From NCBI GenBank assembly GCA_047495785.1, contig JBLDXI010000015.1, forward strand, positions 4,154,001 through 4,218,000: a DNA stretch of 64,000 nucleotides. The letters are read 5' to 3'. A program made the translations under genes and the position numbers. The DNA comes from Lepidodermella squamata (taxonomy: Eukaryota > Animalia > Gastrotricha). The notes under the pieces were generated by a model. That model ran no database searches. It saw nothing but the letters and a program-made list of their open reading frames with translations, and had not been told where the DNA came from. Of the stretch, positions 7,868 through 60,231 are shown one piece after another; positions within the stretch are counted from its first letter, which is position 1; the number at the start of each line of letters is the position of its first letter.

Positions 7868-10800
7868 GCTGCGATTGAATATTAAATTTTCTGAGATTTC
7901 TTAATAAAAATAATTGTTGAGGAGTGTGCTCCCAGCTTATTAATTTCACATCTCGTTCGGCTTGGATACGGCATCAACTGTACACTACAACGGACTGTAA
8001 CCAGCATCGCCGAGATGAAGCCGGAATGCCTCCTGCTACTGTCGATGTTTGGCGCTGTGGTTATCCTATGGACTGTCGACTTGTCCTTGGCTGGGTCACT
8101 TCTCGCTTTTGACCTGGCAGGACAGACTAATTCAAATTCGAACTTGGCTGCTTCTACGCCACTCAAGGCGCGTGTGAATCGCGTGCCGTTTGAAACGTGG
8201 TGCCGTGAAATCAACGGTCAAGACGACTATAGTGTGCTCGGACACGACGGCAGGCCAACAGAAACCACGACGCATGAAGGTTTTTCGATCTTTTTTTGTT
8301 ATTTGGCACGCGATCCAAAACGTCAAATTACTCGCATGAGAGGTTTTATTCTGATTTTACTCCTGATTTCGGGGGTTCAGCCAAATCCGGGGCCCCCTGC
8401 TAGACACGAATTACCAGTCACACCAAATCATGAGTTGAGCGATGTAGTTCAGAAATTGAATTATGGGGACGAAAAAATGAAATTCATACACGCGGTTCAT
8501 TTCAATGTGAATGGCTTGACATGTAAACTGGAAAAATCTAGTATTTTCAAATATGAAGCCCTCGCTGAATTCTGCTCAGTGAATAAGCCAGATCTAATCC
8601 TAATATCGGAGACGAAAATTCCGGCGAATTCTACACCGAAATTTGTCGAGGATATGTTTTCAGACTATAGTTGCATTTGGGTTGGACGGGAAAATTCTGG
8701 CGGTGGCGGTGTAGCAATATTAGTCCGCAACAATTTGGTGATCAAAAATTATTGGTCAACCTCATCCACAATCGAGAACATTCACGCTTTAATCGAATCA
8801 CCAAATGGAATGACATTCACAGCATCCGTGATATATCGATCACCAACAGTAATGCCCAAAATTCCAGTCGAAGAACTAGACAGTGTTTTAGTTGATCTTA
8901 CTGCAAAATCGATGCATGTCAATCATCGATTTATAGGCGGAGATTTCAATTGGGACCTTCTCGATATCAAAGTTGACTCAGAATTACGAGACACATTCAA
9001 TACGTTTGATCTGAAACATAGCTTTCCACACTGCATTACTAGGCCAGCCGCTCTTACCATGCTCGACCATTTTTGGACCACTGAAAAGGAAGAAAACATC
9101 ATCTTATCGGGAACAATACATGGGCTTAGCGACCATCACGGGATCTTGTTAGTTATCACGGACCAGGGAACAAAAAGGTTTAAAAACCAAGTCGCAACCG
9201 AATCTAAGTATCGTAACTTGAAAGCTATCAAGGCAGACCAGTTCAATTATGAACTCGGTAAGGCACTAGGAAGTCCTAGCATCGAAACCGGAGATAGCTC
9301 ACAGAATTGCTGGGATAAAATCCAGACAGCGATTATTAAGGTTCTTGATAAACTTGCACCAGAAACAGTTAGAAAATCTACGCACCGCCGCACCAAACAC
9401 CGGCCAACTTTTCACTCACTTAGCAAACAACGAAAGGAACATCGAAAAATCCGGAAATCGCGAAGGGCCAAATGGCGCAGTAAAGTTACTGAGGCAGGGC
9501 GGGATTCCAAAAAAATCTGGAAGGTGGTTAATGAGTTTAGACCTAAGAAATCGTCCAACCACAACGACCCGAAGAATCAGGAATTTTCATTTAGGCATAT
9601 CACGCAAAGGGAACTATGCCTGGCATTCTCAAAAGTGAAAAACAAATCTACGACTGGTCACGATGGTATTCCGGAGTCTATTCTTAAACTAGCTTCTGAT
9701 GTTTTGAAACCTCATTTACTCGTTCTGTTCAATGTAATAATTGACAATAACACAATTCCTGAGCAATGGAAAATCGCAGTGGTTCATCCTCTTCACAAAG
9801 GTGGGTGTAAATCTGACGTAGGTAATTTTAGGCCTATTTCAATACTGTCAGCCATTTCCAGAACTTTTGAACGGTGCATTTCCATGCAAATTAAGGAACA
9901 TATCACCAATATCGAGTTTCTTTCGCCTAGCCAATTTGGTTTCAGACAATATCATTCTACCGACACATGTCTAGCGAAACTCAGTAATGATCTACGTAAG
10001 ACTCATGAACAAAGCAAAATATCGGTAGCTATTGCGATAGACTTGAGCAAGGCTTTTGACTCACTGCATCACCAAGGTGTCTATAACTCCTTAATTAGCG
10101 CAGGTTTCACAGAGAAAGCAGTCGGATTAATTCGCAATTACCTTGAGAACCGAAAACAGTATGTTTCGATAAACAATACCTTTTCAGACCATTTGCCTTT
10201 GCTCTACGGCGTGCCCCAAGGTAGTGTACTGGGGCCGCTACTTTTCACGCTATATATTAATGAGATGGCATCGATTCCCAGATTTGCGAAACTAGTCCAG
10301 TTCGCAGATGATACCACTGTATATCATTCAGGAAAAGATGTTGAAAAGTTACAACAGGAGCTTCAGTACGACATTGATCAATTGAGTGTCTGGCTCGCAG
10401 CGAACAGTCTAATGGTAAACGGGAAAAAATCGCAGATGATTGTTTTGCCAACCGACTACAACACCACTTCCCCACCTAAATTCGAAATCAAAATTGACGG
10501 CTGCTTGATCGGAACAACGTCATCACTCAAAGTCTTGGGGTTTACTCTTGACAATAAATTGGGATTTAAGGAACATTTAAGGGGGGTGAAAAACAAATCA
10601 CGTAGTGGCTTATTCGGACTGAGGATCGCTGCTAAATACCTTGATCGAAAGACTCTCAAACTCATGGCAAATGGCCTAATATTCTGCCACTTAATGTACT
10701 GCGATACAACTCTCTCGCAGCTGGCACCGACCAAGCTCAGCAAACTACAACGTCGCCAAGACCAGGCCGTAAGAATCATTTGCCACGCTCCGATGAACGC

Positions 10801-11427
10801 GGACCCTGCACCGCTAAGACAAAAACTCGGATGGCTGGATCTTGACGGAAAACGAAAAGTTCACCTGGCAACACTGATCTGGCGCTGCATTAATGGTGAG
10901 GCCCCGGTAGCCATAGCCAACTTCTTCAAACTTCGAACCGCACCAATGGCTTCTACCCGCAAACAAAACGCCCTCAAAGAACTCTCAAACATCCTAGAGG
11001 TGCCCAGGACTAAGTCAGCGATCATGGATCGGTGTTTGGCTCACCATGGATCGGTATTTTGGAACTCTCTCCCCGACCACATCCGCACATCCAAAACTGC
11101 CGACCAATGCAGAAACTTGGTTTACCGTCACCTGCTTACACAACAAAAAGAACTTACCTCAAATACCGCCGCCTGAAACCAGAAGACAAGAGCATCTGCA
11201 TTTTATATTTTTATATTGATCCTGCTACAAACCAACATTCATCACAATTGTTTTCTTTGTTGAGCTATCTTCTTTTTTATACATATAAGTTACATGATGT
11301 TTTATAACTATCTAATCTTGTGTACAGTTTAAATCGAACCTAACTAATCCATTGTCTTTTTTTACAGCTGAGCTTTCCAACTTTTTCTAAAAACGGATGA
11401 ATGGCTCATAAATAAATAAATAAATAA
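7868..11427 (+). mobile_element. Apparently full-length non-LTR retrotransposon (CR1/L2-group-like LINE)
   Basis: Flanked by an ATTCA direct repeat (7863-7867 and 11428-11432), ends in a (TAAA)n tail and carries one intact APE+RT ORF. Confidence 0.93.
8015..11176 (+). CDS. LINE polyprotein: APE endonuclease + reverse transcriptase
   Basis: APE motifs HFNVNGL, ISETK, GGGVAILV, GGDFN, LDHFW and SDHHGI. RT motifs FRPISILS, QFGFR, AIDLSKAFDSL, GVPQGSVLGPLLF and QFADDT. 2A-like LLLISGVQPNPGP upstream of APE. Confidence 0.95.
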   Translation: MKPECLLLLSMFGAVVILWTVDLSLAGSLLAFDLAGQTNSNSNLAASTPLKARVNRVPFETWCREINGQDDYSVLGHDGRPTETTTHEGFSIFFCYLARDPKRQITRMRGFILILLLISGVQPNPGPPARHELPVTPNHELSDVVQKLNYGDEKMKFIHAVHFNVNGLTCKLEKSSIFKYEALAEFCSVNKPDLILISETKIPANSTPKFVEDMFSDYSCIWVGRENSGGGGVAILVRNNLVIKNYWSTSSTIENIHALIESPNGMTFTASVIYRSPTVMPKIPVEELDSVLVDLTAKSMHVNHRFIGGDFNWDLLDIKVDSELRDTFNTFDLKHSFPHCITRPAALTMLDHFWTTEKEENIILSGTIHGLSDHHGILLVITDQGTKRFKNQVATESKYRNLKAIKADQFNYELGKALGSPSIETGDSSQNCWDKIQTAIIKVLDKLAPETVRKSTHRRTKHRPTFHSLSKQRKEHRKIRKSRRAKWRSKVTEAGRDSKKIWKVVNEFRPKKSSNHNDPKNQEFSFRHITQRELCLAFSKVKNKSTTGHDGIPESILKLASDVLKPHLLVLFNVIIDNNTIPEQWKIAVVHPLHKGGCKSDVGNFRPISILSAISRTFERCISMQIKEHITNIEFLSPSQFGFRQYHSTDTCLAKLSNDLRKTHEQSKISVAIAIDLSKAFDSLHHQGVYNSLISAGFTEKAVGLIRNYLENRKQYVSINNTFSDHLPLLYGVPQGSVLGPLLFTLYINEMASIPRFAKLVQFADDTTVYHSGKDVEKLQQELQYDIDQLSVWLAANSLMVNGKKSQMIVLPTDYNTTSPPKFEIKIDGCLIGTTSSLKVLGFTLDNKLGFKEHLRGVKNKSRSGLFGLRIAAKYLDRKTLKLMANGLIFCHLMYCDTTLSQLAPTKLSKLQRRQDQAVRIICHAPMNADPAPLRQKLGWLDLDGKRKVHLATLIWRCINGEAPVAIANFFKLRTAPMASTRKQNALKELSNILEVPRTKSAIMDRCLAHHGSVFWNSLPDHIRTSKTADQCRNLVYRHLLTQQKELTSNTAA

Positions 11428-49218: not shown

Positions 49219-52200
49219 TTACTGGCTATTGCTCGGAAGATTGCAATCTGCGATAGCTCCATCTTTAATCATATCGGCAATATGGCCGTAATAGGCGGCG
49301 ATCGACGACATTGCCGCAGCATTCAAACTACTGGAAGATCCGAGGTGGTGATGAGGCAGAATTGGGGTGTTAACAGATGGGGTAGAATTCGGGGCGAAAA
49401 CTATCGGAATGCGGTGAAGGCTCGCAAAAAGTGACGGCGACACCGGAGCGACAGGCGTCGAACTAGCTGGCGCAACATGGTCCAACAAATGCTGCGCGGC
49501 TATCAGCGTTTCCGGGTCGTGAGTGGTCCGTAGCAATTCAGCTAATTTCGCCTTCACCTCAGGCAAACGCATCAAAGACGAAACATCAACTGAAGAATCA
49601 CTCGAGTCAAAAGCGGCGAATAATCGGGCGATTGAAACCAAAATCGGCTGCTGAGGCGGCAGATTTTTCGGGTTTGCCAATAACAGCGCGAAGAGAAACT
49701 CGCAGCATTGAAACTTTTCAATAGGGTCCAATTTATCGATGTCAGTCAACCGATCTTCCCAACAGCCGCACGAACTGCTGTTGTTATCAACTGTTGAACT
49801 GACACTAGCTCGTGGGTTCAACCTTCTCGATGCCCTAGAAGCATGATCCGGCATGATGATATGAGCCACAAGGGAATAAACAACAGTCCTCGGTCGGCTT
49901 TGCTCCGAACTCGCGAAAACCGAATTAACCGGCTGGTGAAGTCTCAGCAATAGCCGAGATGCATAGCAACAAATTGCGTTATCAGGATGGTCAATTGATT
50001 TGAAAAGCAGCCTGGCTAGAATGAAGTGAATGTGGTCCCTCATGTCAAGGCCATGCGCAACAGCTGTCGGGATGATACTGGAGAAATTCCGTGAAAAAAC
50101 ACTAACATGACGCTGGTAACAGGACAAAATTGTTTCCAATGGTGAAGAAGTTCGCGCCCACAATGACGCGATAACTGCATCGACGAGAATCAGCGCGTCT
50201 GCATAGATTGTCGGTTCATCGGATAGCAGAAATGCCACAGACAGCCAGAAGAAGTCGCCTAAAATCGCGATTAAGCTGGCTGGGATTCCGCTTGTTATTC
50301 GAGCGAAAAACGATAGAGCCCCGCTTATTCCAACAGAGACATTAGGCGAAGAGCAAGACATCGAATTTTGAGCCAAAATCTGGCCTAGAATTCGAAAAAT
50401 CTTCTCAACGTCATTCAAAGCTGTTGAAACTTGAACCATGTTGGCCGGTTGAAGAGCGGATAACAGTCCTAGAATCCGTACTGATTCACGGACTGACGGG
50501 GCTAGAACAACGACTTGTTCATTGGTCGATTCAGATTTCATGGCCGTATCAATAATTTTCCGGCATAGATCAGTCCATCTCGAGCAGACCGATTTGTCAA
50601 CAATGGCTACTAAATCGACGACAATTTCTAACAGAGATGCCCAATTTTCGCCAGACAACGCCGCAGTTGTAGTCGCGTTGTTGAAATCCGGTTGAATGAA
50701 CATATCCGTGAATTTCGCCTCAGTCAATTCGGCTAGAGCACGATGGACCTGGGGTTCGCTAGAATGGCTAGCTAAAGCACGGATTGAGTTGTAAAGAAGA
50801 GCATAAATCGCTTCACCGGCTAACGGAGCCCCAGAGCCGAAGAGCGCCAGTGAAAAATGGATCAAAACTTCGGCTACCGATTCAATTTCGAGAAAATCTT
50901 CGGATAAAAATGCGTTCAAAATGCGAACAAAAAACACCATTCTCGAGCTTGGTCCGGTCATTTTTGTCGGGAAGGTCAGCATAAGGTCTTCAACGCAACG
51001 AGCCATGATTTTCGACGCAGATTTCGGGTCTCCCCTCGCAGTTTTCAGCAAAATTAACAGGGCGTTATTTCGCCGTTGCATGTCGTTAGGCTGAATAGCG
51101 GATTGAAGGCTTAGAACAGCTTCGAAGACCATGTCGAAAAATTCGTGTAGTTTCGGGAAAACCATCGAAGTCAGATGAGCGTTAGACGGCAAATCGATGA
51201 ATGCGCTAACAAGAGATGTGATTGTGTCATTCAGCGGTGACGGTTGGTTTTCGTTGTGAGAACCTCGAATCGGGGCAAGGTGTTGCAGCCACGGCCCGAC
51301 GCACTCACAAATCGCCGCCTTAACGTGCGGCAGTTGCGATTCGGCCGCTAGATAGTAGGAACAGGCAGCTACGAAGTCCAGGAGTAACCATGAGGCTGAC
51401 TGGCAGATTTTCAAGCTGAGCCGGCTGACTAACTCAGACGACCAAAGTGGAGGGTAAAATCGGTCAATTTTCGGTAAACCCCCCGACCCGGCAGCTACGA
51501 TTCTCAGCAGATTCGATAACCTTGCATCGTCTTCGATATTCAACTCGAAACGATGGCACAAAGACGCGACAAGATTAAGAGCTGACGACTGGACATTAGG
51601 AACGCCTGAGGACAGATTTGCAAGACCAGTCGCGAGGAGAAATCCGGAAACATCTCGCAATCGGACAGGGACAGACCCCGTCATTCTTGCGGTTAAAAAA
51701 GCCCGAGAGTGGTAGGCGTGATTGAAATCCTGGGCACTACCACCGCGTGATGACGTCAACTGAACAGCCGCCATTTTTTCTTTGAACGCCTTCAGCGATT
51801 CGTAGATTTCCGAAACCTCAGGGTGTTCAAGTACAACCGGAACAGGTTCGGCGCGTAAAATCAGCGTGATTTGTTGTTTCAACGCGTCCAGTTGAATGTC
51901 TTCAACATCTTCCGGGGCGTAAGTCTCGACAACGTACAGCAAACATCCGGCGAATAGCCGAACTCGATCACCGGTTGACACTTTAATGGCGCATTTATTC
52001 GTCTGAATGTTCATGTGAACAACCTTTTGGCGAGAACTCTTCGTGGCTCCGGTGAAAATTCGGGCATCTTCGTCCAGAACCAACGTGCTCTGGGGCAGTT
52101 TCAGCTGCGGCACATGCGATCGTAGTTCTGTCAGATTTTCGGGGAAAATGAATCGGCAGCCAACGTTTTGGCGAAGATACGAGACAAAACGGTCGTGAAG

Positions 52201-55200
52201 TCGAGCGTAATCGGCCACGAAAGGCGAGCATTGGTAGATGTAAATTGTGGTCAAATTTGTCAAAACAGCTTCCGGAATGGCCGAAAGCTTCTGGAGCAAA
52301 TCGCTCTGAAAAAATCAATGATTTACTACAAATTTCTTTTTAGATTTTGGAAATTCACCTTAAACATTACGCCGACTGGTGCCTGGGTCAAATCAACAAC
52401 TAGTTCCCATTTGGTACCAGCTGCATTGTACGGTTTCAACATGGTTATCATCAACTGGGCCAAAGCTTCACTGCCGGGAGCATTTGCAAATGAGTCGCCA
52501 AAATCGGCCAAAAATGGTCTGAAATTAAAAAAAATATTATATGGAGCATTTTTCTGAGGCTAAAATTATGGTTTTTTTGGTTTTTTAATTATTCAAGCAA
52601 ATCGCCGCTTTAATTGAAATTAAAATTAAATATTCAAATATTTACCTTGTGTGTTTTGGAATGAGGTAGAAAACAGGATTTCCAGCAGCGGACGACCCAG
52701 AATGATAGAAAATTTTAGCCTCGCGAAGTTTTTCCATTTGTTCCGCCATTTGCGGCTCTAGACGATCATTAGTTACCAGCGACTGGCTGCCGAATGACGA
52801 CGCACTGCGCGATGCAGCTGCATGCGGTCCACTTGAAGCGAATGTAGCCAGGTAGAACGACAACTCGGCCGGCCCCAGTTTATTCAACAGCGATTCCAGT
52901 CGATCAAGAGGTTTTCGGCCAATCAAACGCCGTTCACGCAAGCAATCTGCCACCCGCTCTTGGTTCGTGTACAGAAAGTAATGCAACGAATGGCGAACAC
53001 TCTCGCCCAGAAATAACGAACTAGCCGCCGGCGACGAGGCCGCCCCTTCGTCGCTGTTGATCAAATAATCAACAAATTCGTCGATATCTTTCCGCAGCGT
53101 CAAGGTGAACTCATTAAGCGGTTTCATAAATTCTTCTTTCAGCGGCTGGCCATTTGCGGCTGATTGTAAAAGCTTCGCTACTAGGGTGAAGGCCCGTTGC
53201 ACATGTTTAGACGGCCGGTCGCATAGCCCAAATTCGAAGGAACTAGTCAAAAACGGGTTGATAAATCGGAGGAAAACCAGGGTACCACCCGTTAACCGTA
53301 CAACGTCACTGTGCGGAAACCGCTCGGCTAAAACTTCATGAACGCATCGACAGAGCGAGCGTAATTTCGCCGGGAATCGTTGCCGGCTTGAAACTAACGC
53401 GCCCAAAACTTCACGAGCTAGCCTCCGCAAATTCTCGCGATGTTCCTCGATATTAGCCTCGCCTTCTAGATTTTCAGGATTAACCTCGTAAGAACTCGCA
53501 TCCTCGCCGAAATTCATCAGCCTTTTCGCAATTGGTCCTATTGTTTCGGCGACATAATACGAGCCAAATGTCTGGAAGCTGTAGGAAAGAAGGCTGGAGG
53601 CTAAATTCGAGCCGCGTAAAACAGTGTCAATCGGCGATAGAGTCAACTCGCGCGACAAAACGTTGATAACAAGTTGCGACAGCAAATGCTTCGCGTCGAA
53701 CAAATGGGTCAGCAAACGAGCCAAGTCCTGCAGTTGATAGGCCGGGACAACTTCGACCAGCGCCATGACAACAGGCAGCTCGCCTCGATCGTCTAACATA
53801 GTGACAAGTTCGGCCAGTGACGCGAATTCGTCGCCGCTCGCTTCATCGGAAGACGCAGCGTTCGTTGAGATACCCTGCCGGATGAAGCGGGAGAGCGCGT
53901 CTAAATACGACGACCTGATTCTCGCATCTGGAGCCATAATCAAACACAGCGATGCACTCAGGCCTAAATCGCCGTTGAATAGTAGAAGATTCAACAAAGC
54001 GTGGAGTGACTGATCATCGATTTCGCTTGACGACGAACTTTGCGGTAAATTTCGGTATAAATAACCCGATTTTTCGACAATAAATTCCGAGCATTGCTTC
54101 AATTTCCGAAGCCGGAATGAATGGTCGACATTTCCGCCTGATGCGTCCATTATCAACGGAAATCGAGATAAGGCTGTTGACATAGTTTTAAGCTGGAGCA
54201 GAGCGAGTTCGTTCGACAGCACTTGTTGCGGGAAATTCAGTAGATATTCGACGACTTTCGCTCGAAATTTCGTTTCAAGACGGTAGCCCATCTCCTCGCG
54301 CCGCTTTAAAACCGCGAGGAGTAGCGAGCAGAAATTCGCGTGTAGCTTCACCGTGTTAACAGTGCGTACGTACTGACCGAGGAGGCTTATCACTTCTTCG
54401 AGGGTGCTACTGACCTGAACGTCGACCCGCGTCGACAAACTCGGCTTGTCGAGCATCATTTTGAATAGCAGGGTGATATTACCGACAAAGAGCGTGTTCT
54501 GCTCGGAGACAACGACCTGGTTTGAGAGATCGAGGCATTTCGTAACCAGCTTGTGCGCCTCCTCGATTACGATGGACTGAATGGGTGGACGCAGGTCACC
54601 GCCCAAACTTTCACGCACACACCGCTCAACCCGCACGCCGTACTTCTCTTCATTCGTATGAACAAGCATTCGTAGTAAATCGCCCACGTACGTACTCAAC
54701 AAATCATCACTGGCTTTACTTATCGCAGCATCTGCCGATAAAGTGGGGCCGACGATCAGGTGCGGGGTTTGAGTGCCAGAACCACCTGTTTTTCGCTGGT
54801 ACACCCGGTGCTTGAAATACGCATCGGCTAGAGCGGCGAGAAAATACGTCATGTGACTCCATTCAACCAGCAACTCATCAACCGAGCCAATTAATTCCGA
54901 CTGCGAGTCAACAGATGGTGATGGTAAATTGATCTGATTCGAATGACGTCGCTGTCCCGGTATCAACCCACCGCCCCCTTTGCCGAACCCGGGCGATGTA
55001 GTCTGATCGCCGCTGCCAAACGTGGCGGCCGGGCTTGAAATCCCGGGCGATGGCGATGAATCCGTTGTGACAATCGAAACAGTTTGCGCGTTACCGCCAT
55101 TTTTCAGAACCAACATTACCGCCTTTGTTTTAAGGACCCAAGTCGAGAAAACGCATTCCCAGGCCCCGATGACGCTCGGGCTGGGGTAGCGGAGGGTTCT

Positions 55201-57536
55201 CAGCGAGGTCAAAACGTGTTTCTGCAACGCTACCCGGCCTAATGAGACACTCTGCCGCCGCAATTCGTTGCTCATTTCAGCGTACGAGTGTAAATTCGGG
55301 CAGAATTGCATTACGACCAAATCCTCGCCCTGGCAAATGTTATCGACAATTTTACACAGGTTAGCGAGACAATCGAGCAGAGCAATAACTGTAGCGGTAT
55401 CTGTGGTCCATAGCCGACTGATCAGCGCTCTTTCGAACCGTTGAACAGTGTCTTTAATCATCGGCTGCTCATTACCGACACACTCCGGCCGAATTGCGTT
55501 AAAAGTCGCGAGCAATTTCGACGACAATAAATTTAAGGCGGAGACAAAATCTGACAACATGGCGCACGAACAGTAATGCATGAGGCGTTTCGAGAAGGCG
55601 TCGATAGGAATGCATAACATTCGAAGACGGCTCAAGCCCTCGGACGACTGGCCAACCGGCCAAGACAGACCATTGACGAGCTGCTCGATAGCCCGGACGC
55701 ATTTTTTAAACATCGGCTTGTCCAGTAAGCTACACGTTGCATTGATCAGTTCATTCAACAGGCCGGGGTCCTCTTCCGCCGATAACACGACCAATTTCGG
55801 CGAGGCGATGTACAGTTCGAGAAAATAGACAATCGCCTGAAAAAAATCAATGATTTTTAAGGAAGAATATTTTTTTTAACAATTTTTCTCACCTGTGAAA
55901 TGGAGGAATGTGACTCGTCGATTGAAGTCCGTTCGCCGCGATTTTGCAATTTAACCGGACGAACTCGCATGGAAGAGTAGCCAGACTGAGAGCCGCCAGA
56001 TCCGCCAGATTGCGACGAATTAGACTGAGAGTTCGACAAATAATGAGTTGTGAGTTGCGTGAAATAGCTCGCGACTCGATGGCCAGCCGCACGGGACAAC
56101 TTGGCGCGGAATACATCGCGTTTCGAGTCTTCTTGCAACGACGCCCATAGAGCTTTGAGGGCAATCGCAACTAAAGTAGGCCCAGAATGGCCGTTCAATG
56201 GATCGACAATAGCCGGGTGGAACATGTCGTGAATCAACTCGTCAGCTTTGAAAAAATTCGACTCGGAAACAGCCAGAGTTAAACAGATACAAAGCGTCTG
56301 AACGCAGCTTTCTTCCAAACATTGCGACATTCCTTTCGTTGGTTTCTTTCCAGTCTCGACGAGAAATTGTTTCAGTTCGAAGGCGATGGAAGGCAGCAGA
56401 TTTTTCGACAAATCATCGCGTCGGTTTTCCGCGGGCAGCCGGCCTAATGACGCGCAAAATCTTGCTAGAATAGGCGCGACGAATTCGTATTCGTGGCTGC
56501 GCTTCAATTTTGCTCGCAAATTTTCGACAAAACCTGCGGCTTCTTCGCTCGAAGTACAAACGGTTGAGGTAAATTTGTGTGAGAAAACTATGCTAGCCAT
56601 CATGAGTGGCCACAATTGCTGCCGTATTCGCTCTTTATCAAGCGGTTGTCGACCAATTTTCGCAACTTTGTCACTCGCCAAAATAGCGGCGCAAGATTCG
56701 AAAATTTTAGAGCATGGCTCGAAAAAATCGTCGACTTTATTCGCATGAATCTGAATGAACTCTTGAGTCCTTAAATCGACAGTCCGCCATAGAAGGACGG
56801 CGAAATAAGGGGCGCAGACCACCAGTTGAGTTACACAAGAAGACTTCCGACCCGGCGCAGGTCGAATTCGCTCGGAGAAATCTCGAAGCAACGGGTTGAT
56901 TTGTTTTAAATTCAAATCGAAATACTGAATTAGGGAGAATGAGGCTATCAATAAATTAGTTGAATCGCTTGGAGACGGAACGGGCGATGAAGCGGTCGAT
57001 TCGTCGGTGGAATCTCGCTCGGGTTCGGCGAATAATTGTTGGATAAATAGCGAAACAGCTGGGAAACTTCGCCGACTCAGCTCGCAAGCCAATTTACCCA
57101 CCAATTCGATCTCGGCGCTCCACAACGGCCGATCTGAATTCGTGAAGTGGCATATGAGTTTGCCGAATTCGATAAATAACGTGAATGCAATCGATTTTTG
57201 CGACTCGTTATCGTTCGCCGAGCCACTGTCTACTACACATTTCCAAATAGTTTCGAGCAAATAATGCACTGATTGTCGGTAATTTTCTTCGACCTCAGGC
57301 GCTAGATGACCGATGTTGGCTGATAAATCGGCGCCCAACTGCCGCAAAATTCGAATGAGGCCGTTGATTAGAGAGGAATGGTAGGCCGGTGAACTACTGC
57401 ATAACCTGATGAAACACTCCTGAGTGCTGATCAAATTTCGCTGAGCCAGGGTTGACGGCTCGCCGGTTTTCACCGGTAAATTCGAATCGACCCTGGTTAG
57501 AAGGGCCTCGACACACTCGTCCCCAACAGCAGCCAT
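49219..57536 (-). CDS. NF1: Neurofibromin (4 exons, about 2693 aa)
   Basis: Exons 57536-55893, 55836-52646, 52518-52359 and 52305-49219 sum to 8082 nt, in frame. N-terminal LPVKTG, RasGAP TVLRGSNLAS / FLRFINP / KLLQSAAN / KEEFMKPLNEF, and Sec14 start KIFYHSGSSAAGNPVFY. Confidence 0.92.
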
Positions 57537-57692
57537 TTACGCCACTGTCCCAAGAGATTGCTAATCAACGTTGAAATAAATTAAATCATAATTTAACATT
57601 CTAAAATAAAATGGGACAACAATTCAACCCCGTCTTGAATACATTATTAAATTAGAATTAATGTGGCACAACAACAAACTACGTAGTAAAAT

Positions 57693-58655
57693 TCAAGGTT
57701 CAACAGGTCCGAGTTCGTCTAACATGCGCTCCAATCGTTTGAGTGGTTTTCGCCCAACAAGACGATTTTCGCGTAAGTGGTTGGTAATCTTCGATTGATT
57801 AGCGTACAAAAAGTAGTGCAAGGTATGGTAGCCATTTTCCTCGAGGAAGACAGAATTATCAATGGAAGGCGAAGGTTTCGATTCGTCGTCACGGCAAATT
57901 ACATCGTCGATAAATTTGTCGATGTCTTGTTTCAATTGCTCGGTAAATTCGTTCATTGGTTTCATGTGAGCTTCTTTTAAATGATGGCCGTTTGCAGCTG
58001 ACTGAAACAGCTTCGCAACTATCATAAAAATTCGTTGGACATTTTCGTTATGTTCGAAGGCACTTGTAAGGTAAGGATTAACAAATCGAAGAAAAAATAT
58101 AAGGCCGGTTAATCGAGTGGCATCAGCCTTGTGCTCGGATAGTAGAAAATGAAAGCATCGTATCAACGATCTCAATTTGATCGGAAATTTCTGCTCGCCA
58201 TTTGTGATTTCTTTGAACAAATCTGTCACCAAGTTTCGGAGATTCTCGCGGTGTTGATCGGCAATCTCAGCGCTCGATACAAATTTAGGGTTCACTTCGT
58301 AAAGGTCACAATTTCCATTCGCCAAACGATCGGCAATAGGCTGGACTGCAGCGATCAAATAACTCGATCCGAAAGTTTGAAAACAGTACGAAATAAGGCT
58401 GGGTGCTAAATGCGAACCTCGCAGCACCGTGTCGATGGAAGAATTAGTTATTTCTCGGGATAGGACGCTGATAAAAAGTTGCGACAATAGGTTTTTCGAA
58501 TCGAAAAGGTGAGCGAGTAACCGAGCCAGATCTTGAACTTGGTCGTGCGGAATCACCTCGGCAAGAGCGGTAACAAACGGCAATTCACCTCGGTTATCCA
58601 ACATTGTCACCAAATCAGCGGCGGAATCGTAAATTTCCTCGCCGCACTCCGTCAT
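57693..58655 (-). CDS. Stand-alone NF1 GAP-related domain (RasGAP) paralogue
   Basis: Intronless 320-aa ORF collinear with the GRD of the adjacent NF1 (LVTMLDNRGELP ... TVLRGSHLA ... FLRFVNP ... KLFQSAAN ... LGPVEP). Confidence 0.88.
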   Translation of the reverse strand: MTECGEEIYDSAADLVTMLDNRGELPFVTALAEVIPHDQVQDLARLLAHLFDSKNLLSQLFISVLSREITNSSIDTVLRGSHLAPSLISYCFQTFGSSYLIAAVQPIADRLANGNCDLYEVNPKFVSSAEIADQHRENLRNLVTDLFKEITNGEQKFPIKLRSLIRCFHFLLSEHKADATRLTGLIFFLRFVNPYLTSAFEHNENVQRIFMIVAKLFQSAANGHHLKEAHMKPMNEFTEQLKQDIDKFIDDVICRDDESKPSPSIDNSVFLEENGYHTLHYFLYANQSKITNHLRENRLVGRKPLKRLERMLDELGPVEP

Positions 58656-58712
58656 TATTTCTTTGATTATAAAAATCTATAATAAATTGAATAATTTATT
58701 GGAGGCGATGGA

Positions 58713-59317
58713 TCATGCTTCGAATCCCATAACCCTGTCAACCCAATTCGGAAAATTATCTTGATGTTTTTCAGATTTATAAGGCTTCAGTTTCGAAAAG
58801 TCGCTGTTTTGAAGAATGTCAGGCAGAGTTCTAGGAAAGAATGAAATAAATGATGAAAAATATACATAACATTCAAAAAGTACTGGCAATTCCCGTAATA
58901 CAAATGCCCAAGTTGCTGCATTTTGTCGGCCAATTCAATTTGATGGTTGTGCATTAGGCGCTCATTAATAACGACAACGAGATTCCGTCTTAACCAGAGT
59001 GATTCCAGAATGGAACCAGAACCAGCGTGGCTGATGATCAGATCAGCATTTGCCATGCATTCGTGGATTGACGGTCGGAAATCAAATACTTCGATCGACA
59101 TATCTTTGTAGGAATTCACATCGGGTTTTGGACCTTTGCCATATTGCACTGTCAACCTTTTGCAGCCGATACCGTGAAGAATCTAAGCAAAATGATGATA
59201 TGTTTCAAATTAGGATATTTGTTAAATTACATCAAGAGTTCGTTTTTCGAGGACAGCATCGATAAGCTCGTCGAAATGGGTAGTTCCGACCGTAACAAAC
59301 ACTTTTTCCAACTTCAT
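58713..59317 (-). CDS. ALG13: UDP-N-acetylglucosamine transferase subunit ALG13 (3 exons)
   Basis: Exons 59317-59231, 59182-58884 and 58830-58713. Motifs VFVTVGTTHFDELI, VQYGKG, ADLIISHAGSGS and NERLMHNHQIELA. Confidence 0.92.
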
Positions 59318-59465
59318 TTCGCTTAATTTTACACTAAAATTAATTTGAGAATATCACAATAAAAATCTTCAATTTAAATCACGTGAATCCCGAATAATAA
59401 TATCGCAGAACAATACACAATAGAATAACGCGATACACCAAGTCATGGACCAGATATCGAAGTTC

Positions 59466-60060
<595 letters not shown>

Positions 60061-60231
60061 TTAAAAGTCTACGTTAATAAAACGCAATTACAACAAGCAT
60101 TATTGTTACTAGCCAGATCTAATGGCATAATAACAGGAAGTAAAACCTATAAAATGATGCAGGCAACCGGTTGATCAACCTTTCAGAAACTAATGAGCAG
60201 AAAAATTGTAGAAAATTGAGCGAAAAAACAG

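What the first reader, a model, noticed from the sequence alone, without database searches (positions are those of the whole stretch)
57693..58655. Natural mini-neurofibromin: a stand-alone GAP-related domain gene directly upstream of NF1
Seen: an intact 320-aa ORF comprising only the GRD, keeping the arginine finger (VLRG), FLR motif and K..Q motif. Aligned codons are heavily changed at synonymous sites versus the parent (LVTMLD: ttg gtg aca atg ttg gat vs ctt gtc act atg tta gac), implying long purifying selection. Established: its limits closely match the isolated catalytic NF1 GRD fragment used biochemically, and full-length NF1 is a dimer whose GRD access is conformationally regulated by the scaffold and Sec14-PH. 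Inference: a possibly constitutive or differently localised RasGAP; I know of no such described paralogue.
Basis: partly seen in the sequence, partly recalled or inferred. Interest (0 to 1): 0.78.

Follow-up and report, generated by a model that had tools for sequence, protein, structure and literature searches.

The report
Stand-alone neurofibromin GAP-domain gene
Just upstream of its full-length NF1 gene, this small invertebrate carries a separate, expressed, anciently conserved 320-codon gene that encodes only neurofibromin's Ras-inactivating domain, a natural counterpart of the "mini-NF1" that gene therapists build by hand.

Summary
Positions 57693-58655 (minus strand) hold an intact 320-aa ORF that is 56% identical to the GAP-related domain (GRD) of the NF1 gene starting 156 nt downstream. 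It covers human NF1 residues 1205-1529, the classic NF1-333 fragment.

All eight columns invariant across 27 RasGAP domains are kept: the arginine finger R79, FLR, P194, K215, Q218 and N222. AlphaFold gives pLDDT 92, and the best structural matches are human NF1 GRD.

It is not a relic. Synonymous sites are saturated while pN is 0.28. A neutral copy at this divergence would carry about 10 stops (P<1e-4). Two other deeply diverged species have a stand-alone GRD ORF behind ALG13, and in one it sits between ALG13 and NF1.

An RNA data set that shows spliced ALG13 and a poly(A) tail has contigs over codons 16-274, from both haplotypes, with no junction into NF1. NF1 has its own canonical N-terminus, with an in-frame TAA just before its ATG.

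The copy evolves 3-10 times faster than the parent GRD. Transcript ends, GAP activity, substrate and the organism's identity remain untested. I found no paper describing such a paralogue. Verdict: a real gene, a new variant of a known kind.

The parts
57693..58655 (-). Mini-GRD coding sequence: 320 codons plus TGA. It encodes GAPex-N, GAPc and GAPex-C of an NF1-type RasGAP domain.
58419..58421 (-). Codon of R79, the arginine finger, equivalent to human R1276 in the finger loop TVLRG / TLFRG.
   Evidence: Invariant column in the 27-sequence alignment. Aligned to human FRGNS.
58086..58094 (-). Codons F188-L189-R190, the FLR motif.
   Evidence: Invariant columns.
57990..58013 (-). Codons K215 to N222 (KLFQSAAN), the K..Q...N helix of RasGAPs. 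Human K1423 lies here.
   Evidence: K215, Q218 and N222 are invariant. Alignment to human LMSKILQSIAN.
57834..58609 (-). Stretch of the ORF (codons 16-274) covered by RNA contigs of run X1. Two haplotypes are present at 58108-58254.
   Evidence: table 8, records 1-4. The listed haplotype differences are 4 synonymous plus I159L.
58656..58712 (-). 57-nt spacer between the ALG13 stop (58713-58715) and the mini-GRD ATG. It holds AATAAA (58695-58700) and an unpaired acceptor-like TTATTATAG ending at 58677.
   Evidence: Sequence read. Analogous acceptor-like sites lie 20-37 nt before the ATG in L001 and L002. Use as a trans-splice site is inferred, not shown.
57537..57692 (-). 156-nt spacer between the mini-GRD stop and the NF1 ATG. 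It holds an acceptor-like TTTTATTTTAG ending at 57601, and an in-frame TAA directly before the NF1 ATG.
   Evidence: The X1 depth bin for 57534-57714 is near zero.
49219..57536 (-). Full-length NF1 gene in three large ORF blocks: 55857-57536, 52642-55794 and 49219-52299. This is the parent of the duplicate.
   Evidence: The L002 gene calls include PH_NF1.
52864..53835 (-). Parental GRD inside the 1050-aa NF1 exon, aa 654-977 of that ORF.
58713..59315 (-). Upstream ALG13-like gene (Glyco_tran_28_C). Its introns 58831-58883 and 59183-59230 are removed in the RNA.
59360..59852 (-). 3' part of the TRAPP-subunit gene. Its poly(A) addition site at 59360 lies 45 nt before the ALG13 ATG.
   Evidence: loose poly-T end at 59360

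Best explanation
An ancient tandem partial duplication of NF1 in this invertebrate lineage left a copy of the GAP-related domain alone. That copy has been kept as a separate protein-coding gene between ALG13 and NF1. It is transcribed and encodes a 320-aa all-helical protein with the complete catalytic apparatus of a RasGAP. It most likely works as a scaffold-free Ras-GTPase activator: it lacks the HEAT/ARM dimer core and the Sec14-PH module that gate GRD access in full-length neurofibromin. It sits in a conserved same-strand, very tightly spaced gene run (WD40, TRAPP, ALG13, mini-GRD, NF1, NPRL2). Its mRNA is therefore probably cut out of a polycistronic precursor by spliced-leader trans-splicing.

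Shown: the ORF, its homology, its fold, retention of the catalytic residues, purifying selection, conservation in synteny, and transcription.

Inferred: GAP activity, Ras as the substrate, lack of autoinhibition, and operon processing.
For: Homology and limits.

Catalytic residues: R79, F188, L189, R190, P194, K215, Q218 and N222 are invariant in 27 GRDs and kept in all three stand-alone copies. The window copy keeps 35 of 53 columns conserved at 80% or more, against 38 of 53 for its parent.

Fold: pLDDT 92, pTM 0.87. Best Foldseek hits are human NF1 GRD 7r04 and 6v65, TM 0.78-0.84.

Selection:
- pS 0.77-0.90 against pN 0.28-0.43.
- ML omega about 0.04.
- The neutral simulation gives about 10 stops, P(no stop) < 1e-4.
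- Haplotype differences are 4 synonymous and 1 conservative.

Conservation:
- A 325-aa ORF (P0002) lies 87 nt behind the ALG13 3' end in L001.
- A 297-aa ORF lies between ALG13 and NF1 in L002, with the same wider synteny.
- The AU test rejects a window-specific duplication (p = 0.003).
- The mini copies group together and share derived changes: Cys165 to I/L/L, Ser118 to L/C/I, and loss of RFP. Paralogue-specific sites outnumber species-specific sites 6 to 1.

Transcription: X1 contigs lie on 57834-58609 from both haplotypes. The same run shows spliced ALG13 and a poly(A) tail, and has no contigs on long neighbouring stretches.

Separate from NF1.

Operon context: spacers of 45, 57 and 156 nt. 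Earlier scan notes report spliced-leader trans-splicing and operons in this genome (not tested here).
Against: - No enzymatic, binding or localisation data exist.
- The RNA evidence comes from assembled contigs only. They cover codons 16-274, so neither the 5' end (no spliced leader seen) nor the poly(A) site is mapped. Contig depth cannot rank genes.
- The copy evolves 3-4 times faster at non-synonymous sites than the parent GRD, with 6-12 times longer tree branches. This could mean changed or relaxed function.
- It has a 6-residue deletion in the variable loop before the K215 helix.
- The L002 orthologue lacks the C-terminal 75 residues or so (GAPex-C).
- Tree support for a single origin of all three copies is only 68-74%. 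The AU test cannot reject an independent duplication in the L002 species (p = 0.135).
- The protein has no membrane-targeting motif, whereas engineered GRDs need one for full potency (PMC12480499).
Confidence: 0.72

Rival explanations
1. The protein is expressed and selected but no longer acts mainly as a Ras GAP. It would be a binder or regulator, for example one that sequesters Ras-GTP or a SPRED-type adaptor, competes with full-length NF1, or has shifted to another small GTPase such as Rap, R-Ras or M-Ras.
For: - Non-synonymous change is 3-4 times faster, and branches are far longer, than for the parent GRD.
- All three copies have lost residues conserved in NF1 GRDs (Cys165, Ser118, the RFP motif).
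- The variable loop is shortened in the window and L001 copies.
- GAPex-N is kept in all three copies.
Against: - Every universally invariant catalytic column is retained in three lineages across saturated synonymous divergence, including the arginine finger and the FLR arginine. A pure binder would not need these.
- The L002 copy has dropped the C-terminal half of the SPRED-binding GAPex but keeps the catalytic core.
Confidence: 0.17
2. It is not an independent gene. The ORF would be a 5' leader or upstream ORF of NF1 transcripts, a 3' extension of ALG13 transcripts, or an alternative first exon.
For: - It lies on the same strand, only 57 nt after the ALG13 stop and 156 nt before the NF1 ATG.
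- Transcript ends are not mapped.
- L001 is a single contig that joins the ALG13 3' end to the ORF. It may, however, be DNA.
Against: - The ORF has its own ATG and stop, and ALG13 ends at a conserved stop in all three species.
- An in-frame TAA lies directly before the NF1 ATG, and NF1 has its canonical N-terminus.
- No RNA junction leaves the ORF, while both ALG13 introns were detected in the same run. X1 has almost nothing on 57534-57714 and nothing on 55000-56266 of NF1.
- Even on a polycistronic precursor it would still be a separately translated cistron.
Confidence: 0.08
3. It is a transcribed but decaying partial pseudogene of NF1, like the unprocessed NF1 fragments in the human genome.
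For: It is a partial duplicate next to its parent and evolves faster than the parent.
Against: - P(no stop) is below 1e-4 at the observed divergence even without indels.
- Intact ORFs are present in three species.
- Differences by codon position are 0.39, 0.22 and 0.61.
- All invariant residues are kept.
- The structure model is confident.
Confidence: 0.02

Closest known systems
GAP-related domain of human neurofibromin (NF1-333; PDB 1NF1, 6V65, 6OB2; within full-length 7R03/7R04/7PGR)
   Same: Same fold (TM 0.78-0.84) at about 30% identity. Same limits (aa 9-319 equals human 1205-1529). Same arginine finger, FLR and K..Q..N residues.
   Different: In known animals this domain exists only inside a protein of about 2,800 aa. 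Here it is also encoded by a separate 320-codon gene without the HEAT/ARM core, the Sec14-PH module or the dimer interface.
Engineered mini-NF1 payloads (GRD 1200-1532 fused to the KRAS4B C-terminal 24 aa; PMC12480499)
   Same: An autonomous GRD of about 330 aa that includes both N- and C-terminal GAPex (SPRED-binding) extensions. That paper found this to be the best-expressed and most potent length.
   Different: The engineered protein needs an added membrane-targeting tail. The natural protein ends in LGPVEP with no lipidation or polybasic motif. Its activity is untested.
Whole-gene NF1 paralogues (zebrafish nf1a/nf1b, PMC3484870; yeast IRA1/IRA2, from my own knowledge)
   Same: Retained duplicates of neurofibromin-type RasGAP genes.
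   Different: Those are full-length duplicates. This one retains the catalytic domain only and lies in tandem with its parent.
Unprocessed partial NF1 pseudogenes of the human genome (from my own knowledge, not tested here)
   Same: Partial genomic duplications of NF1.
   Different: Those are non-coding relics with disrupted frames. This copy is intact, conserved between species, under purifying selection and expressed.
Short RasGAP-domain-only proteins of amoebae (ESM Atlas cluster, 326 aa, Discosea)
   Same: A RasGAP domain of about 320 aa as the whole protein, so stand-alone RasGAP modules are not unprecedented in eukaryotes.
   Different: This is a feature-similarity hit only. Those proteins are not known to derive from NF1, come from a different supergroup, and their relationship was not tested.

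Membership tests
RasGAP domain family (Pfam PF00616) | Profile match above the curated threshold | tested here: met
   32.6 bits against a cut-off of 28.3. phmmer to the human NF1 GRD gives E = 2e-45.
RasGAP domain family (Pfam PF00616) | Catalytic arginine finger in the finger loop | tested here: met
   R79 is an invariant column in 27 sequences and is kept in all three stand-alone copies.
RasGAP domain family (Pfam PF00616) | FLR motif and the K..Q...N helix that contacts Ras | tested here: met
   F188, L189, R190, P194, K215, Q218 and N222 are invariant.
RasGAP domain family (Pfam PF00616) | All-helical RasGAP fold | tested here: met
   AF2 pLDDT 92. Foldseek hits include NF1 GRD, p120GAP and SynGAP, probability 1.00.
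RasGAP domain family (Pfam PF00616) | Stimulation of GTP hydrolysis on Ras | not testable with these tools
   Needs a biochemical assay.
Neurofibromin (NF1) orthologue | GRD closer to NF1 than to other RasGAPs | tested here: met
   Best PDB and library hits are NF1. It forms a 100/100 clade with this lineage's own NF1 GRDs.
Neurofibromin (NF1) orthologue | Multi-domain architecture of about 2,800 aa (N-HEAT/ARM, GRD, Sec14-PH, C-HEAT) | tested here: not met
   It is 320 aa and GRD only. It is therefore a domain-only paralogue, not a neurofibromin. The true NF1 lies downstream at 49219-57536.
Downstream gene of a spliced-leader-resolved operon | Same-strand genes with spacers of about 50-150 nt, conserved in relatives | tested here: met
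   Spacers are 45, 57 and 156 nt. L002 has the same order and strand.
Downstream gene of a spliced-leader-resolved operon | Spliced leader on the mRNA 5' end at an unpaired acceptor | tested here: inconclusive
An acceptor-like site ends at 58677. RNA contigs stop at 58609 and no leader was seen.

The most novel reading that the evidence does not exclude
This lineage has kept, across synonymous-saturated divergence between species, a two-tier Ras off-switch transcribed from one gene run. One tier is a scaffold-free, constitutively accessible NF1 catalytic module. The other is the regulated, auto-inhibited full-length neurofibromin. The free module would have adapted to life without the scaffold, through changed surface residues and possibly changed GTPase specificity. 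That would make it a natural template for minimal NF1 replacements.
Probability: 0.35. Interest if true: 0.75.

Novelty: new variant of a known kind. Interest (0 to 1): 0.62.

Why it matters
In the animals studied so far, as far as I know, neurofibromin is a single giant gene. Whether its roughly 330-residue GAP domain is a sufficient functional unit is a practical question for NF1 gene therapy, because the cDNA exceeds AAV capacity (PMC12480499).

Here evolution has run that experiment. A GRD-only gene was retained under purifying selection in at least three deeply diverged species, with boundaries that coincide with the empirically optimal NF1-333 / 1200-1532 fragment.

Comparing it with its neighbouring parent shows which positions are free to change once the scaffold is gone and which are not. 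It also allows a direct test of whether an unregulated GRD is tolerated, and useful, in vivo.

Tried and rejected
- The search for homologous proteins with the mini-GRD found nothing, although relatives exist. The exhaustive representative search was needed.
- An exact look-up of the window protein found nothing.
- Two metagenome locus scans, one with the mini-GRD alignment and one with the NF1 alignment, found nothing.
- Rfam found no RNA family in the window, so no spliced-leader RNA gene here.
- Attempts to name the organism failed. NPRL2 and the TRAPP subunit gave only the L002-type metagenome relative and a 53% nematode hit. Named NF1 hits (octopus, fly, Ciona, flukes, Trichuris, Oscarella) are all about 30-35% identical and lie outside the lineage clade. 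The 'probably rotifer' label comes from earlier scan notes only.
- No remnant of the missing C-terminal part lies downstream of the L002 copy.
- Pairwise dS could not be estimated because pS exceeds 0.75 everywhere. In the ML codon model the branches hit the optimiser bound, so omega of about 0.04 is only an order of magnitude.
- The bacterial promoter and terminator scan is irrelevant to a eukaryote and was ignored.
- The breaks of the RNA contigs at 57834 and 58609 were checked for splice signals. No GT or AG is in place. They are more likely polymorphism or filter holes than junctions.

Full report
**The observation.** The window holds an uninterrupted 320-codon ORF at 57693-58655 on the minus strand.
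- BLASTP against the large NF1 exon ORF 52642-55794 on the same strand gives 56% identity over the whole length (E = 2e-110), mini aa 5-319 to exon aa 654-977.
- Pfam sees only a RasGAP domain.
- Against solved structures the best matches are human neurofibromin GRD constructs. Query 9-319 aligns to residues 8-332 of the 333-residue 1NF1 chain, which is human 1205-1529.
- The quoted LVTMLD codons are exact.
- The DNA run X2 has contigs continuous across both flanks at even depth, so the arrangement is genuine.

**Surroundings.** All neighbours lie on the minus strand.
- NF1 itself consists of three large ORF blocks (55857-57536, 52642-55794, 49219-52299), separated by small introns.
- Its first block aligns from residue 7 to human NF1 residue 8, and a TAA lies directly in front of its ATG. 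NF1 is therefore complete without the mini-GRD, and the two cannot be read through in frame.
- Upstream lies an ALG13-like gene. Its stop at 58713-58715 is only 57 nt before the mini-GRD ATG. Further upstream are a TRAPP-subunit gene and a WD40 gene.

**Is it a functional coding sequence?** Several lines say yes.
- Between the copy and its parent, differences by codon position are 0.39, 0.22 and 0.61. pS is 0.81 (saturated) and pN is 0.28. Of 180 identical residues, 114 use different codons.
- A neutral simulation from the parental sequence gives about 10 stop codons at the observed divergence, with P(no stop) below 1e-4 even without indels.
- An exhaustive search of 1.8 billion representatives found two further stand-alone GRD proteins.
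  - P0002 is 325 aa and 50% identical. Its 1,272-nt contig L001 carries the ALG13 3' end 87 nt upstream.
  - P0011/P0168 is 297 aa and 36% identical. It sits on the metagenome scaffold L002 between ALG13 and NF1. The wider order there is the same: LRRK-like, Ank, WD40, TRAPP, ALG13, mini-GRD, NF1, NPRL2, CCDC138.
- Synonymous sites are saturated in every between-species comparison, including the NF1 GRDs themselves (pS 0.90 at 85% amino-acid identity). These species are therefore old relatives.
- pN among the mini copies is 0.33-0.43, against 0.13 for the NF1 GRD.
- A GY94 codon model puts omega near 0.04, but the branches sit at the optimiser's bound, so only 'far below 1' is safe.
- Within the species, the listed differences between the two haplotypes are four synonymous changes and I159L.

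**Origin.**
- In trees, this lineage's NF1 GRDs and the mini copies form one clade (100/100).
- The mini copies group together (68-74%), and the window and L001 copies pair (84-92%).
- The AU test rejects a window-specific duplication (p = 0.003). It does not reject a separate one in the L002 species (p = 0.135).
- Shared position behind ALG13 favours one old tandem duplication. So do the shared derived states (Cys165 to I/L/L, Ser118 to L/C/I, loss of the RFP motif) and a 6:1 excess of paralogue-specific over species-specific sites.
- The mini branches are 6-12 times longer than the NF1 GRD branches.

**What the protein looks like.**
- In a 27-sequence alignment the only invariant columns are R79, F188, L189, R190, P194, K215, Q218 and N222. 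These are the arginine finger, the FLR motif and the K..Q..N helix, and all three mini copies keep all of them.
- The window copy keeps 35 of 53 columns conserved at 80% or more, against 38 for its parent.
- AlphaFold2 gives pLDDT 92 and pTM 0.87, an all-helical model. Foldseek returns human NF1 GRD first (7r04, 6v65; TM 0.78-0.84), then p120GAP and SynGAP.
- The window and L001 copies have both GAPex extensions.
- The L002 copy stops after the helix equivalent to residues 229-254, roughly the extent of the 256-residue GRD crystallised with KRAS (6OB2). What is conserved is therefore the catalytic core, not the C-terminal SPRED-binding half.
- A six-residue deletion shortens the variable loop before K215 in the window and L001 copies.
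- No lipidation or polybasic tail is present.

**Expression.** Only one reads call was allowed, and the runs are stored as contigs.
- Run X1 is listed as RNA by guess only. One of its contigs skips both ALG13 introns at GT..AG, and another ends in a 21-nt poly(A) tail at 59360. It has no contigs at all on 55000-56266 or 59887-60067. It therefore behaves as mRNA without DNA background.
- X1 contigs lie on 57834-58073, 58108-58254 (both haplotypes) and 58225-58609, which is codons 16-274.
- No junction leaves the ORF.
- The bin between the ORF and NF1 is almost empty.
- The first 46 nt and the last 141 nt of the ORF are not covered. The breaks are not at splice signals, and the tool warns that holes prove nothing.
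- Transcript ends are therefore unknown, and contig depth should not be used to rank genes.

**Mechanism.**
- I conclude that this is a real, expressed, selectively maintained gene for a scaffold-free NF1-type RasGAP module. GAP activity on Ras is inferred from complete retention of the catalytic columns.
- Faster evolution and the shared loss of some NF1-conserved residues leave room for an altered partner or regulatory role.
- The 45, 57 and 156-nt spacers, the unpaired acceptor-like sites before the ATG in all three species and the conserved same-strand order suggest an operon resolved by spliced-leader trans-splicing. Earlier scan notes report that mechanism elsewhere in this genome. I did not see a leader here.

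**Comparison and novelty.**
- Literature searches found whole-gene NF1 paralogues and engineered GRD constructs, but no natural GRD-only paralogue.
- PMC12480499 reports that a 333-aa GRD (1200-1532) carrying both SPRED-binding ends is the best-expressed and most potent truncation, and that it needs a KRAS4B tail. The natural gene has the same limits but no tail.
- An ESM Atlas cluster of 326-aa RasGAP-only proteins in amoebae shows that stand-alone RasGAP modules exist elsewhere. The relationship was not tested.
- The gene fails the architecture test for neurofibromin and passes every testable RasGAP-domain feature. It is best called a domain-only NF1 paralogue, a new variant of a known kind.

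**Organism.** I could not identify the organism myself. Earlier notes guess a rotifer.

Noticed in passing
window 59313-59360: The poly(A) addition site of the TRAPP-subunit gene (59360, seen as a poly-A-tailed RNA contig) lies only 45 nt before the ATG of the next gene, ALG13. WD40, TRAPP, ALG13, mini-GRD, NF1 and NPRL2 all run on the minus strand, in the same order as in L002. This layout is operon-like.
   Followed up: partly
window 55153-55315, 56766-56893, 58044-58254, 59439-59502: Heterozygosity is patchy. Blocks of about 200 nt carry 9-13 differences between two haplotypes and are separated by 0.7-1.2 kb of identity. Both haplotypes are present in the DNA run X2, and partly in the RNA run X1. 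In NF1, 23 of the 25 listed differences are synonymous.
   Followed up: partly
L002 8877-9770: The stand-alone GRD of the L002 species has a 24-residue N-terminal extension and ends about 75 residues early, lacking GAPex-C. No remnant of the missing part lies in the 230 nt before NF1.
   Followed up: yes
window 1547-23650: A tandem cluster of Cys-loop ligand-gated ion-channel genes (Neur_chan_LBD hits in at least six ORFs) is interrupted by an intact 1,053-aa non-LTR retrotransposon ORF (endonuclease plus reverse transcriptase) at 8015-11176.
   Followed up: partly
window 49219-57536: NF1 in this genome is built from three giant coding blocks (559, 1050 and 1026 codons) with an intron of about 62 nt between the first two. 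The parental GRD lies inside a single exon, so the duplicate's limits do not follow present-day exon borders.
   Followed up: partly
protein hits P0018, P0024: Nematodes outside the Caenorhabditis group (Trichuris muris, Parascaris univalens) have clear NF1-type proteins.
   Followed up: no
window 56385-57477 (run X1): Low-depth RNA contigs over NF1 exon 1 show nine 'opposite strands' fold-back joints. These are most likely library or assembly artefacts at low coverage.
   Followed up: no
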